Source: Octopus sinensis (lineage: Eukaryota). From it: 64,000 nucleotides of DNA. Location: contig NC_043022.1 in the NCBI RefSeq assembly GCF_006345805.1, positions 18,910,001-18,974,000 of the forward strand, read 5' to 3'. The notes below the pieces were generated by a model that saw only the letters and a program-made list of their open reading frames with translations, did not search any database and had not been told where the DNA came from. Within the stretch, counting starts at the first letter, position 1. Each line of letters opens with the position of its first letter. Positions 12,945 to 62,643 of the stretch are shown here, piece by piece. A program made the translations under genes and the position numbers.

Positions 12945-13311
12945 CTAAATGGACACTTGGGTCAGTTCTGATGGCGAACGTTCTAGAATGATTGTGTCTT
13001 GGTCTTCCTGACCAGGGTCATTCCCTTCTGGCCTACCCTGCTTAACCATCACCACGCCTCCCCCTGTTCCTCCTGCCGGGGTCACTGGCCCTCCTTCAAG
13101 GATTGTCACAAGTCTGCCCATTAGGTGGCCATCAGTGGTGTCGCTGGTCGTGTCTGGACAAAGGTCCGTCGTGCTGTTGTCAGAAGTGGATTTGGTGGTG
13201 TTGCATGGCAGTGACTTCTCTTCTTGTTCCAATGCAGTAATAGGATTGTTGACCATACACTGGACAATCTGTTGTGTTGTCTCCCTCTCAAGAGATTCAC
13301 TGAATCTGCGA
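12945..13311 (-). CDS. Probable terminal exon (phase 2): cytoplasmic tail [10 protein letters not shown]...[12 protein letters not shown]
   Basis: Acceptor ttattttccatag; phase matches the 17057 donor; complex, relatively GC-rich sequence. Confidence 0.78.

Positions 13312-62643: not shown

What the first reader, a model, noticed from the sequence alone, without database searches (positions are those of the whole stretch)
12945..62643. Uncharacterised giant (>2,990 aa) single-pass receptor built from bacterial-like Ig/FN3 modules
Seen in sequence: 16 phase-consistent exons, 9 D-x-[TS]-P-P linkers and 5 D-x-E-[ST]-G-[IM] motifs, then cadherin-like domains, EGF, a TM helix and a tail. I cannot match this architecture to a named gene family. 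Inference: the modules resemble prokaryotic surface-protein domains more than vertebrate FN3. The protein may be an invertebrate adhesion, matrix or pattern-recognition receptor with a very long, cleavable ectodomain.
Basis: partly seen in the sequence, partly recalled or inferred. Interest (0 to 1): 0.75.

Follow-up and report, generated by a model that had tools for sequence, protein, structure and literature searches.

The report
Giant uncharacterised FN3-repeat membrane receptor
This octopod locus encodes the last ~3,000 residues of a ~5,000-residue single-pass surface protein from an ancient, unstudied animal family (sponge to amphioxus), built from bacterial-type FN3 modules around an inactive glycosidase-like domain, with a conserved cleavage site near the membrane.

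Summary
On the minus strand, 16 GT-AG exons (62643 to 12945) join into one open frame of 2,993 codons. It has exactly 9 D-x-[TS]-P-P and 5 D-x-E-[ST]-G-[IM] motifs, then a Big_9/cadherin-like domain, an EGF domain, a TM helix and a 133-aa tail. A bivalve locus is collinear with the window, and an Octopus bimaculoides protein (82-89% identical) confirms the C-terminal exons. The 17 repeats are divergent FN3 domains. A profile built only from them scores bacterial modules at 50-71 bits, against at most ~20 bits for classical animal FN3 chains, so "prokaryote-like" holds. First, a ~310-aa domain between modules 14 and 15 has a GH16 glycoside-hydrolase fold but no catalytic E-x-D-x-E. Second, a ~200-aa juxtamembrane domain conserved across phyla carries a furin-type site in 15 of 22 orthologs. 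Third, the family runs from a sponge to amphioxus with a nearly fixed module count, and every named member is "uncharacterized" or carries only an automatic label. I propose a long-reach, glycan-binding adhesion or matrix receptor that is convertase-processed. Function is inferred; there is no RNA evidence and the 5' end lies outside the window.

The parts
62549..62643 (-). Exon 1 of the window part (95 nt): N-terminal half of FN3-like module 1. The gene continues 5' beyond the window.
   Evidence: Homology to L001 1167-1265 (E=1e-5); AG acceptor, GT donor, phase fits exon 2.
51699..52232 (-). Exon 2 (534 nt): rest of module 1 (DKESGI) and module 2.
   Evidence: 50% identity to L001 over 183 aa (E=6e-65); splice sites.
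49881..50058 (-). Exon 3 (178 nt): start of module 3 (DDTPP, DEETGI).
47739..47932 (-). Exon 4 (194 nt): rest of module 3.
46619..47310 (-). Exon 5 (692 nt): modules 4 and 5 (DQESGI, DSESGM).
   Evidence: 39% identity to L001 over 238 aa (E=4e-56); module-HMM hits.
44090..45657 (-). Exon 6 (1,568 nt): modules 6-9 and the start of module 10. Includes a poly-Ser insert at 45385-45447.
39944..42491 (-). Exon 7 (2,548 nt): modules 10-14 and the central GH16-like domain.
   Evidence: 38% identity to L001 over 833 aa (E=2e-171); 34 orthologs.
39944..40879 (-). Central GH16-like beta-jelly-roll domain (aa 1625-1936), predicted to be catalytically inactive.
   Evidence: AF2 pLDDT 79, pTM 0.72. Foldseek PDB top 50 are all GH16, E to 4e-9, TMt to 0.78. 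No E-x-D-x(x)-E in 23 orthologs.
37118..38024 (-). Exon 8 (907 nt): modules 15 (with a Cys-rich insert) and 16, and the start of module 17.
30098..30403 (-). Exon 9 (306 nt): rest of module 17 (conserved MEPGRC.H).
   Evidence: L001 14491-14814 (E=2e-17); alignment A5.
28242..28370 (-). Exon 10 (129 nt): start of the juxtamembrane domain. Weak GTTAAA donor.
   Evidence: Orthologs carry ~45 aa here; phase-compatible AG..GT open exon.
25631..25775 (-). Exon 11 (145 nt): juxtamembrane domain (YGSAAS...DP...TSR.LR.R).
23401..23543 (-). Exon 12 (143 nt): juxtamembrane domain, ending ...LIFWDT.
   Evidence: 94% identity to P0051; L001 18653-18808.
23199..23281 (-). Exon 13 (83 nt): [12 protein letters not shown]...YKVK, with the invariant W and C of the juxtamembrane domain.
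   Evidence: 80% identity to P0051; bivalve equivalent found in L001; it restores the reading phase.
22148..22300 (-). Exon 14 (153 nt): ICP..., the furin-type site RSRR (22241-22252), a conserved strand, then N-x-PP.
17058..17998 (-). Exon 15 (941 nt): Big_9/cadherin-like domain (17726-17998), a second beta-rich region (17339-17725), EGF (17213-17338), TM helix (17093-17170) and the start of the tail.
   Evidence: Pfam Big_9 E=2e-8; 88% identity to P0051 over 316 aa; hydropathy.
12945..13311 (-). Exon 16 (367 nt including the stop): cytoplasmic tail ending ...[16 protein letters not shown].
   Evidence: Best phase-compatible junction. The bivalve tail ends ERSESRLTDIDV-COOH. Acceptor alternatives are 13305 and 13299.

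Best explanation
The locus is a real, intact, intron-rich octopod gene. The window holds its 3' two-thirds: 16 exons and 2,993 aa. Judging from orthologs, the full protein is ~4,600-5,400 aa. It is a type I membrane glycoprotein of an old, uncharacterised metazoan family. SHOWN: The ectodomain part in the window is a string of 17 divergent FN3 modules joined by D-x-T-P-P linkers, of a subtype shared with bacterial surface proteins. Between modules 14 and 15 lies a ~310-aa domain with a predicted GH16 (concanavalin-A-like glucanase) fold that lacks the catalytic Glu-Asp-Glu strand. A conserved ~200-aa juxtamembrane domain with two invariant Trp, two invariant Cys and a polybasic furin-type site follows. 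Then come a Big_9/cadherin-like domain, one EGF, one TM helix and a 133-aa tail ending in a hydrophobic-x-hydrophobic C-terminus. INFERRED MECHANISM: The FN3 array acts as a long, semi-rigid stalk of fixed length, roughly 60 nm for the modules in the window. It presents the inactive GH16-like domain as a glycan-binding (lectin-type) head or mid-piece to an extracellular matrix, a neighbouring cell or a surface coat. A proprotein convertase cuts the juxtamembrane domain in the secretory pathway. This yields a two-chain receptor whose giant N-terminal chain either stays held by the strand after the cut or is shed. The tail couples the membrane stub to PDZ-type scaffolds. In short, I read it as a long-reach, glycan-binding adhesion or matrix-anchoring receptor that is convertase-processed.
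For: Gene reality and structure: 16 AG/GT exons give one 2,993-codon frame. The window is collinear with bivalve locus L001. O. bimaculoides protein P0051 is 82-89% identical. FN3 nature: the module profile hits titin, contactin and fibronectin FN3. Thirteen or more modules are found by an HMM trained on foreign modules only. Bacterial affinity: 50-71 bits per bacterial module against at most ~20 bits for PDB animal FN3 chains. GH16-like fold: AF2 pLDDT 79 and pTM 0.72. Foldseek top 50 are all GH16 enzymes or transglycosylases, E down to 3.7e-9, prob 1.00, TMt 0.7-0.78. No catalytic motif occurs in 23 orthologs; the strand at the equivalent sequence position reads G-x-G-x-H-[IL]-[LI]-G-Y. Juxtamembrane domain: per-domain E of 1e-14 to 1e-56 in molluscs, brachiopod, nemertean, hemichordates, crinoid and amphioxus. 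Invariant residues include W137, W144, C151 and C169. R-x-[KR]-R is present in 15 of 22 orthologs and a dibasic site in 18 of 22, at the same position. Fixed architecture from sponge to amphioxus: ~15 modules, GH16-like, 2-3 modules, juxtamembrane domain, TM, with signal-peptide-like N-termini. Tail: both octopod and bivalve end E-R-S-x-S-x-L-T-x-hydrophobic-x-hydrophobic-COOH. Big_9, EGF and TM.
Against: No functional, expression or localisation data exist for any family member. The GH16 assignment rests on a predicted structure only; profile searches against Pfam and PDB sequences do not link the domain to GH16. Loss of catalytic residues was read from sequence order, not from a structural superposition. 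Glycan binding is therefore an inference. Cleavage at the polybasic site is predicted, not shown, and 7 of 22 orthologs lack the strict motif. The tail similarity is statistically weak (pairwise E=1.8), and C-termini of other orthologs' gene models differ. The N-terminal ~1,700-2,300 aa lie outside the window, have almost no recognisable domains, and could hold the real ligand-binding or enzymatic part.
Confidence: 0.55

Rival explanations
1. It is a shed structural matrix or coat protein. The TM segment only serves for delivery. Convertase cleavage releases the ~2,500-aa (full length ~4,500-aa) FN3/GH16-like chain, which is the functional product and forms part of an apical extracellular matrix, egg coat, mucus or cuticle-like layer.
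For: The furin-type site lies just outside the membrane-proximal domains. The ectodomain is huge, repetitive and rich in N-glycosylation sites. A PAN/apple domain occurs in the N-terminal region of the scallop ortholog. From general knowledge, ZP-domain and several mucin-type proteins are made as TM precursors and released at a polybasic site.
Against: After the cut, ~330 extracellular residues (Big_9, a second beta-rich region, EGF) and a 133-aa tail with a possibly conserved C-terminus are retained. That is more than a mere delivery anchor needs. The near-constant module number across phyla fits a spacer of defined length better than a bulk matrix polymer.
Confidence: 0.2
2. It is a pattern-recognition receptor. 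The inactive GH16-like domain senses microbial or algal beta-glucans or galactans, as in invertebrate beta-1,3-glucan recognition proteins (GNBP, betaGRP, LGBP), and the receptor signals or agglutinates.
For: GH16 fold without catalytic residues. From general knowledge, this is the same design as GNBP/betaGRP-type sensors. The top structural matches include laminarinases and marine-polysaccharide GH16s.
Against: There is no sequence-level relation to GH16 or betaGRP families. The exhaustive search found only this family, 125 hits, with no glucan-recognition protein evident among the 30 named. The tail has no recognisable immune signalling domain (TIR, death, ITAM-like). The near-fixed architecture held since sponges is not what fast-evolving immune receptors usually show.
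Confidence: 0.12
3. It is a force-sensing, GAIN- or Notch-like receptor. The juxtamembrane domain would be a heterodimerisation domain analogous to the GAIN domain of adhesion GPCRs and polycystin-1, or to the furin-cut Notch HD domain. Pulling on the long FN3 stalk would dissociate the two chains and expose the stub for signalling or further proteolysis.
For: By eye, the core motif [LI]-[FY]-W-[DN]-x5-W-x5-C ... V-x-V-C-[ST] resembles the GPS motif C-x-[FY]-W-D...W...G-C...T-x-C-x-C-x-H-L-T. A conserved [ST]-x-x-F-x-[VIL] strand follows the cut site, where GAIN has its last strand. One flatworm relative is automatically labelled 'REJ domain-containing'.
Against: Pfam GPS, GAIN and REJ models do not match the octopod, bivalve, flatworm or any of the 22 aligned sequences. 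A 22-sequence profile finds no GAIN, SEA or Notch chain in the PDB. The H-L-[ST] autoproteolysis triad and one of the two GPS disulfides are absent. The structure prediction failed (pLDDT 30), so the fold is untested.
Confidence: 0.1
4. It is not a functional gene: a pseudogene, an assembly or contamination artefact, or a recent bacterial insertion.
For: The modules score highly against bacterial proteins, and no transcript data were available.
Against: Sixteen exons have canonical splice sites and an unbroken 2,993-codon frame across 49.7 kb of repeat-rich introns. Orthologs occur in at least 8 animal phyla with conserved exon order in a bivalve. The central and juxtamembrane domains were found only in this family, whose named members are all animal proteins.
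Confidence: 0.02

Closest known systems
Usherin (USH2A), vertebrate giant FN3 single-pass protein (architecture recalled from general knowledge)
   Same: Several thousand residues. Long FN3 array interrupted by concanavalin-A-like (LamG) domains. Single TM, short tail with a C-terminal PDZ ligand. Acts as a long extracellular link.
   Different: Usherin has LamNT and laminin-EGF repeats and canonical FN3 domains. The window protein's modules fall below Pfam fn3 thresholds. Its interrupting domain is GH16-like, not LamG. It has Big_9, a juxtamembrane cleavage domain and a furin site. No vertebrate appears among the 30 family members whose names I looked up. No orthology is indicated.
LET-805/myotactin of C. 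elegans (general knowledge)
   Same: Giant type I membrane protein made mostly of FN3 repeats that anchors cells to a matrix or neighbouring tissue.
   Different: No GH16-like, Big_9 or conserved juxtamembrane domain is known there. No nematode protein appeared among the named family members. The resemblance is of kind only.
Invertebrate beta-1,3-glucan recognition proteins (GNBP, betaGRP, LGBP, CCF) (general knowledge)
   Same: GH16-fold domain that has lost catalytic residues and works as a glycan sensor.
   Different: Those are small secreted proteins recognisable by the Pfam Glyco_hydro_16 model. Here the domain is invisible to sequence models, is embedded in a 5,000-aa TM protein, and carries a 40-aa disordered insert.
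GAIN/GPS domain of adhesion GPCRs and polycystin-1; Notch S1 (furin) site in the HD domain (general knowledge)
   Same: Membrane-proximal extracellular domain that is cut during biosynthesis, leaving a two-chain receptor. W...W...C...C core and a strand after the cut.
   Different: There is no H-L-[ST] autoproteolytic site and only one Cys pair. No Pfam or PDB sequence match. The cut would be made by a convertase. The protein has a single TM pass rather than 7 or 11. The fold is untested.
Bacterial multi-module surface proteins: Armatimonadota-type MAG loci L002 and L003; proteins with a T9SS sorting domain (P0035), PQQ/BamB-like propellers (P0049) or subtilase (P0044)
   Same: The same ~105-aa FN3 subtype: D-x-T-P-P linker, W..F.D.ESGI..Y, G..YY..V.A.N.AG, SDGI.VD. 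They score 50-71 bits per module with the octopod-only HMM.
   Different: The bacterial proteins combine the modules with propellers, proteases or secretion tags. The GH16-like and juxtamembrane domains, EGF and eukaryotic TM/tail were found only in this family, whose named members are all animal proteins. The direction and age of any transfer are unresolved.
HEG1, CRB1 and Delta-like 1 (automatic labels on amphioxus and scallop orthologs)
   Same: EGF repeat(s) next to a single TM helix and a short tail.
   Different: The labels reflect only Notch-type EGF similarity. The other ~95% of the protein has no counterpart in HEG1, Crumbs or Delta.

Membership tests
Fibronectin type III superfamily | Sequence-profile match to FN3 (Pfam PF00041 or solved FN3 domains). 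| tested here: met
   Module profiles hit titin, contactin, neuroglian and fibronectin FN3 chains. One window module reaches Pfam fn3 at E=1e-4 but with 22.8 bits, below the 25-bit cutoff. The five canonical N-terminal modules give no Pfam hit at all. So they are members of the superfamily, but a divergent subtype not captured by the Pfam model.
Bacterial-type FN3 module subtype (D-x-TPP / ESGI signature) | Shared linker and core motifs, with higher profile scores to bacterial modules than to classical animal FN3. | tested here: met
   The consensus in A1 is shared by window, animal and bacterial modules. The window-only HMM gives bacterial modules 50-71 bits, against at most ~20 bits per PDB animal FN3 chain.
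Glycoside hydrolase family 16 | Beta-jelly-roll GH16 fold. | tested here: met
   AF2 model pLDDT 79. Foldseek top 50 are all GH16, E to 3.7e-9, TMt to 0.78. This is fold level only, from a predicted structure.
Glycoside hydrolase family 16 | Catalytic strand E-[ILV]-D-[ILV]-(x)-E. | tested here: not met
   Absent from the window protein and all 22 aligned orthologs. The strand at the equivalent sequence position is G-x-G-x-H-[IL]-[LI]-G-Y. It is therefore not filed as a GH16 enzyme.
Glycoside hydrolase family 16 | Sequence-model match (Pfam PF00722 or PDB GH16 sequences). | tested here: not met
   No Pfam hit at E<=1. The 23-sequence profile finds no GH16 chain in the PDB.
GAIN/GPS domain (adhesion GPCR, PKD1) | GPS motif with four Cys and the H-L-[ST] autoproteolysis site; Pfam GPS/GAIN match. 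| tested here: not met
   Only two invariant Cys and no H-L-[ST]. No Pfam GPS, GAIN or REJ hit in 22 orthologs or in the flatworm proteins. No PDB hit with the profile.
GAIN/GPS domain (adhesion GPCR, PKD1) | GAIN subdomain-B beta-sandwich fold with the last strand after the cleavage site. | tested here: inconclusive
   The single-sequence AF2 model was unusable (pLDDT 30) and no further structure jobs were available.
Classical cadherins | Cadherin repeat (Pfam PF00028) with Ca-binding DxNDN/DxD motifs. | tested here: not met
   Only the bacterial-type Big_9 passes its threshold (35 bits against 23.6). Cadherin_4 and Cadherin_5 are sub-threshold. There is no PF00028 hit. 'Cadherin-like' is correct only in the Big_9 sense.
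EGF-like domain | Six-cysteine pattern next to the membrane; similarity to EGF models. | tested here: met
   The stretch C-x4-C-x9-C-x14-C-x-C-x8-C at aa 2779-2820. Weak EGF_laminin and Teneurin-EGF hits. The ortholog's EGFs match Notch EGF chains. The O. bimaculoides ortholog is annotated 'EGF-like domain-containing'.
Proprotein-convertase (furin) substrates | R-x-[KR]-R in an exposed extracellular position, conserved in orthologs. | tested here: met
   RSRR at aa 2524-2527. The strict motif is at the same column in 15 of 22 orthologs.
Proprotein-convertase (furin) substrates | Actual cleavage of the protein. | not testable with these tools
   This needs protein biochemistry.
Usherin / LET-805-type giant FN3 receptors | Orthology (reciprocal sequence similarity beyond generic FN3). 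| tested here: not met
   Exhaustive search with the family-specific central domain returned no vertebrate or nematode protein among the 30 names looked up. The resemblance is architectural only.

The most novel reading that the evidence does not exclude
The locus represents a pan-metazoan 'dark' receptor family: present in a homoscleromorph sponge, flatworm, molluscs, annelids, brachiopod, nemertean, echinoderm, hemichordates and amphioxus, and not seen in vertebrates or ecdysozoans among the members named here. Under this reading, its FN3 array is of a subtype exchanged between bacteria and early animals. Its juxtamembrane domain is a previously unrecognised, convertase-dependent counterpart of the GAIN or Notch-HD heterodimerisation domains. 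That would make it a single-pass, force-dissociable receptor with a stalk of conserved length and a dead-GH16 lectin head.
Probability: 0.15. Interest if true: 0.8.

Novelty: new variant of a known kind. Interest (0 to 1): 0.6.

Why it matters
If this reading is right, one of the largest conserved cell-surface proteins of non-vertebrate animals has gone unstudied, possibly because the main model organisms (vertebrates, flies, nematodes) did not turn up among its named members. Its near-constant architecture from a sponge to amphioxus points to a specific function that depends on stalk length, at the cell surface or in the matrix. Three points are of wider interest. First, it is an animal FN3 subtype that scores closer to bacterial modules than to classical animal FN3. 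This bears on the old question, raised by Bork and Doolittle in 1992 (my recollection), of how FN3 domains came to be shared between animals and bacteria. Second, it would be another example of a glycosidase fold re-used as a probable lectin. Third, it has a conserved membrane-proximal domain with a built-in convertase site that no current sequence model recognises, and this domain is a candidate new type of receptor-processing module. For genome annotation, it shows that the available cephalopod model is fragmentary and contains a repeat-derived false exon.

Tried and rejected
(1) Pfam on every exon and on the spliced protein gave only Big_9, with sub-threshold fn3, Cadherin_4, Cadherin_5 and EGF hits. 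It found nothing for the canonical modules, the central domain or the juxtamembrane domain.

(2) HYR/hyalin, PKD, LamG, SEA, GPS, GAIN and REJ came to mind from the motifs. None is supported by any Pfam hit.

(3) My first 14-exon model had a phase-forced weak acceptor at 22266. I rejected it once P0051 revealed the 83-nt exon 13 and the 22300 acceptor.

(4) An alternative acceptor at 23666 for exon 12 would add 41 aa. I rejected it because neither P0051 nor L001 supports it. The missing ~43 aa turned out to be exon 10.

(5) The 89-aa insert in the O. bimaculoides model between exons 11 and 12 has no counterpart in the window except similarity to the 67-bp satellite. I judge it an annotation artefact.

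(6) Word-indexed homology searches with the membrane-proximal region, alone and as a two-species profile, found only P0051 and bacterial Big_9 proteins.

(7) The structure prediction of the juxtamembrane region had to use the O. bimaculoides sequence without an MSA and failed (pLDDT 30).

A single bacterial protein was used instead.

(9) Looking up a window exon ORF to identify the source assembly found nothing. Species identity beyond 'octopod related to O. bimaculoides' is unresolved.

(10) Literature searches for six ortholog identifiers returned no papers, and the domain-combination search returned one unrelated paper.

(11) The ORF at 7083-7430 looked mariner-like by eye, but Pfam gave nothing.
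Full report
**1. What is in the sequence**

The window has a eukaryotic look: 28-44% GC over most of its length and microsatellite-rich. All long, non-repetitive open frames with protein-like composition lie on the minus strand between about 17 and 52 kb.

The largest frame (39761-42484) finds about 34 strong relatives at 31-41% identity (E down to 1e-157). They come from mollusc, annelid and amphioxus assemblies, and none has a functional name.

The contig of one such relative (locus L001, an ENA assembly, bivalve-like) is collinear with the window in 12 blocks. 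These run from window 62645 down to 17174, all on the minus strand and in the same order.

I picked GT/AG sites that keep the frame open between these anchors. That gave a first 14-exon model with a single 2,911-codon frame.

Three refinements followed.

- An Octopus bimaculoides protein (UniRef A0A0L8GAX3, 'EGF-like domain-containing protein', 82-89% identical) revealed an 83-nt exon at 23281-23199. It also supported the 22300 acceptor of the next exon.
- Cross-phylum orthologs showed about 45 extra residues between my exons 9 and 10. These map to a phase-compatible 129-nt exon at 28370-28242.
- The final model therefore has 16 exons and 8,983 coding nt. It encodes 2,993 aa ending at the stop at 12945-12947.

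The motif counts are exact: 9 D-x-[TS]-P-P (0.07 expected after shuffling) and 5 D-x-E-[ST]-G-[IM] (0.007 expected).

The weak points are the GTTAAA donor of exon 10, three closely spaced candidate acceptors for exon 16, and the lack of any transcript data.

**2. The repeats**

Cutting at the D-x-T-P-P linkers gives 17 modules of about 105-155 aa. An HMM trained only on foreign modules, from proteins P0032, P0035, P0038 and P0041, finds at least 13 of them in the window's open frames. It finds nothing convincing on the plus strand or outside 37-52 kb.

A mixed module profile matches FN3 domains of titin, contactins, neuroglian, Eph receptors and fibronectin in the PDB. So the modules belong to the FN3 superfamily. 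Pfam's fn3 model nevertheless misses the five canonical N-terminal modules completely. It reaches only a sub-threshold 22.8 bits on one module of exon 7.

An HMM built only from the 17 octopod modules gave the following scores.

- Single modules of bacterial proteins score 50-69 bits. These are P0035 (with a T9SS sorting domain), P0041, and P0049/P0050 (with PQQ/BamB-like propellers).
- Modules encoded in two MAG loci score 54-71 bits: L002 (uncultured bacterium) and L003 (uncultured Armatimonadetes).
- Modules of the annelid and amphioxus relatives score 52-55 bits.
- No single- or few-domain animal FN3 chain in the PDB exceeds about 20 bits. Titin reaches 31 bits summed over about ten domains.

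The inference is supported. This is an FN3 subtype shared between these animal proteins and a set of bacterial surface proteins. Which way it travelled, or whether both simply kept an old form, cannot be decided here.

**3.

Between modules 14 and 15 (aa 1625-1936, window 40879-39944) lies a ~310-aa stretch with no Pfam match. I modelled it with a 23-sequence ortholog alignment. AlphaFold2 gave pLDDT 79 and pTM 0.72, and only a 40-residue insert was disordered.

Foldseek against the PDB returns only GH16 proteins in the top 50. They include lichenases, laminarinases, kappa-carrageenases, agarases, porphyranases and xyloglucan endotransglycosylases. E-values go down to 3.7e-9, probability is 1.00, and TM-scores normalised to the target are 0.7-0.78 at 7-14% identity.

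GH16 catalysis needs an E-x-D-x(x)-E strand (general knowledge). No such motif occurs in the window protein or in the 22 aligned orthologs. The strand that follows the conserved G-x-Y-S-F...A-x-G-x-N strand in sequence order reads G-x-G-x-H-[IL]-[LI]-G-Y, with both glycines invariant or nearly so.

Profile searches do not connect the domain to GH16 at sequence level. I therefore call it a GH16-like, probably non-catalytic domain. I infer a glycan-binding role by analogy with other dead glycosidase folds. That step is inference.

**4. The membrane-proximal region**

After module 17 comes a ~200-aa region encoded by exons 10-14. It is invisible to Pfam and to PDB sequence searches, whether queried as a single sequence or as a 22-sequence profile. 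Yet it is strongly conserved. A two-species HMM finds it with per-domain E of 1e-14 to 1e-56 in bivalves, gastropods, Lingula, Lineus, hemichordates, a crinoid and amphioxus.

The alignment has nine invariant positions, including two Trp and two Cys. The core reads [LI]-[FY]-W-[DN]-x5-W-x5-C ... V-x-V-C-[ST]. A variable loop follows directly and carries a strict furin consensus, R-x-[KR]-R, in 15 of 22 orthologs. It is RSRR in the window (22252-22241), and 18 of 22 have at least a dibasic site. After the loop come a conserved [ST]-x-x-F-x-[VIL] strand and an N-x-P-P motif.

By eye this layout recalls the GPS end of GAIN domains. It also recalls the furin-cut HD domain of Notch. However, the H-L-[ST] triad and one Cys pair are missing, and no model matches. 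The only structure prediction I could run was a single sequence, because spliced window sequences are not accepted, and it failed (pLDDT 30). The resemblance is a lead, not a result.

Downstream come the following features.

- Big_9 (E=2e-8, above its cutoff).
- A second beta-rich stretch.
- One six-Cys EGF.
- A TM helix.
- A 133-aa tail.

The tail exon has no database support. However, the bivalve gene's last exon ends ...ERSESRLTDIDV-stop and the octopod's ends ...[12 protein letters not shown]-stop. Both finish hydrophobic-x-hydrophobic, like a class II PDZ ligand. The pairwise score is weak (E=1.8), and other orthologs' predicted C-termini differ. I treat this as suggestive only.

**5. The family**

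An exhaustive HMMER search with the central-domain profile against 1.84 billion representative proteins gives only 125 hits at E<=1e-3. Name look-ups for 30 of them returned the following taxa.

- Bivalves: Ylistrum, Mizuhopecten, Mercenaria, Mactra, Mya, Potamilus.
- Gastropods: four Haliotis species, with proteins up to 7,526 aa.
- The brachiopod Lingula and the nemertean Lineus.
- The flatworm Macrostomum.
- Hemichordates: Saccoglossus, Ptychodera, Glandiceps.
- The crinoid Anneissia.
- Several Branchiostoma species, with multiple paralogs.
- The homoscleromorph sponge Oscarella lobularis (5,007 aa).

Annelids (Lamellibrachia, Owenia) and the bivalve Dreissena were already. Every name is 'uncharacterized' or 'hypothetical', or an automatic label: CRB1, HEG1, Delta-like 1, and EGF-like-, FN3-, REJ- or P-type-domain-containing.

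The EGF-driven labels are explained by Notch-type EGF similarity, which is the only PDB match of a full-length ortholog. No vertebrate, arthropod or nematode entry appeared among the 30 names. Not all 125 hits could be named.

I scored full-length proteins with the three family HMMs. Six other species, from sponge to amphioxus, show a nearly fixed plan.

- A module-free N-terminal region of 1,650-2,300 aa, with a signal-peptide-like start where the model is complete.
- About 15 FN3-like modules.
- The GH16-like domain.
- 2-3 more modules.
- The juxtamembrane domain.
- The TM helix (a clear C-terminal one in three of the six models).

The distance from the first module to the GH16-like domain is about 1,610-1,640 aa in sponge, abalone, scallop and amphioxus, somewhat more in acorn worm and flatworm, and about 1,610 aa in the window. 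The window therefore contains the entire module array and everything C-terminal to it. Only the N-terminal region is missing. In the two orthologs scanned, that region has a PAN domain (scallop only) and a faint Vitellogenin_N-like signal.

**6. How it most likely works**

Shown: the gene structure, the domain order, the conservation, the predicted fold of the central domain, and the conserved polybasic site.

Inferred: the rest of this paragraph. The protein is a type I surface glycoprotein. Its FN3 array serves as a stalk of conserved length, and the constancy of module number over a very long evolutionary time argues for a spacer or ruler role. The dead GH16-like domain binds a carbohydrate ligand in a matrix, coat or neighbouring surface. 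A proprotein convertase cuts the juxtamembrane domain and produces a two-chain molecule. The tail ties the stub to cortical scaffolds.

I put about 0.55 on this 'long-reach, glycan-binding, convertase-processed adhesion or matrix receptor' reading. The rivals are as follows.

- A shed structural matrix or coat protein (0.2).
- A GNBP-like pattern-recognition receptor (0.12).
- A GAIN- or Notch-like force-dissociable signalling receptor (0.1).
- A non-functional locus or artefact (0.02), which the intact 16-exon frame and multi-phylum orthology effectively exclude.

**7. Comparison with what is known**

The protein works like the giant FN3 link proteins, usherin and C. elegans LET-805. It is not their ortholog. 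Its central domain has the design of invertebrate glucan-recognition proteins, but no sequence relation to them was found. Its processing region may be analogous to GAIN, SEA or Notch-HD modules, but it fails their sequence definitions.

The membership table lists each defining feature and its test. I file it as a new variant of a known kind: a giant FN3-repeat single-pass receptor with an unusual and conserved combination of parts. It belongs to a family that is annotated in genomes but has never been characterised.

**8. Verdict**

Interest is moderate to high (0.6). It is not a new principle. It is a large, ancient, wholly unstudied receptor family with three testable oddities: a bacterial-type FN3 subtype, a dead GH16 domain, and an unrecognised convertase-site domain.

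Noticed in passing
window 20062-22099 (intron between exons 14 and 15): A GC-rich (57%) 67-bp satellite, 30.5 copies, 91% matches. Its translation resembles part of an 89-aa segment of the O. bimaculoides protein model A0A0L8GAX3 that has no counterpart in the window gene. That segment is probably a repeat-derived false exon in the public annotation.
   Followed up: partly
window 10643-11845: A 253-bp tandem repeat, 4.8 copies at 98% identity, about 1 kb downstream of the stop codon. Its origin and role are unknown.
   Followed up: no
window 15958-17000: About 1 kb of imperfect (ATG)n/(ATGATG)n microsatellite inside the last intron, ending ~60 nt from the exon 15 donor at 17058. All six reading frames stay open across it, which produces long spurious ORFs.
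   Followed up: no
window 18037-18410, 54397-54890, 60434-60800: Paired copies of a ~184-238-bp element sharing the core GTCGATTA.ATCGACCCCAG.GCA.AACTGGTAC, scattered in introns. It looks SINE-like, but ARAGORN finds no tRNA gene in the window.
   Followed up: no
window 45385-45447 (exon 6, module 6): A 21-residue poly-Ser run is inserted in a loop of an FN3 module. The bivalve ortholog has a gap at this position. It looks like a coding microsatellite expansion tolerated in a loop.
   Followed up: no
L001 20238-21407: The bivalve ortholog has a second, calcium-binding-type EGF (NINECAPEPC...) between the first EGF and the TM helix. The octopod protein has only one EGF.
   Followed up: no
orthologs P0064 (scallop) and P0081 (acorn worm), outside the window: The 1,650-2,300-aa N-terminal region of full-length family members is almost entirely unrecognised. 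The scallop has one PAN/apple domain (aa 1576-1638). Both have a faint, sub-threshold Vitellogenin_N-like signal near the N-terminus.
   Followed up: partly
P0198 (Macrostomum lignano, UniRef A0A1I8FRK6): A flatworm family member is automatically labelled 'REJ domain-containing protein'. Pfam finds no REJ or GPS in it. This may be worth checking with the PROSITE REJ profile, given the GPS-like look of the juxtamembrane core.
   Followed up: partly
Branchiostoma, Saccoglossus and Haliotis entries: Several distinct loci per genome (for example at least five Branchiostoma floridae LOC numbers, three in Saccoglossus, and a 7,526-aa protein in Haliotis cracherodii). The family has expanded into paralogs in some lineages.
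   Followed up: no
window 7083-7430 (minus strand): A 116-aa open frame (…[19 protein letters not shown]…) looks like the C-terminal part of a mariner/Tc1-type transposase by eye, but Pfam gives no hit at E<=0.01.
   Followed up: partly
window 37380-37391 (exon 8, module 16): A second polybasic motif, RKKR, lies in a Lys/Asp/Glu-rich insert of module 16 (…[21 protein letters not shown]…). The bivalve ortholog lacks this insert, so it is probably not a conserved processing site.
   Followed up: partly
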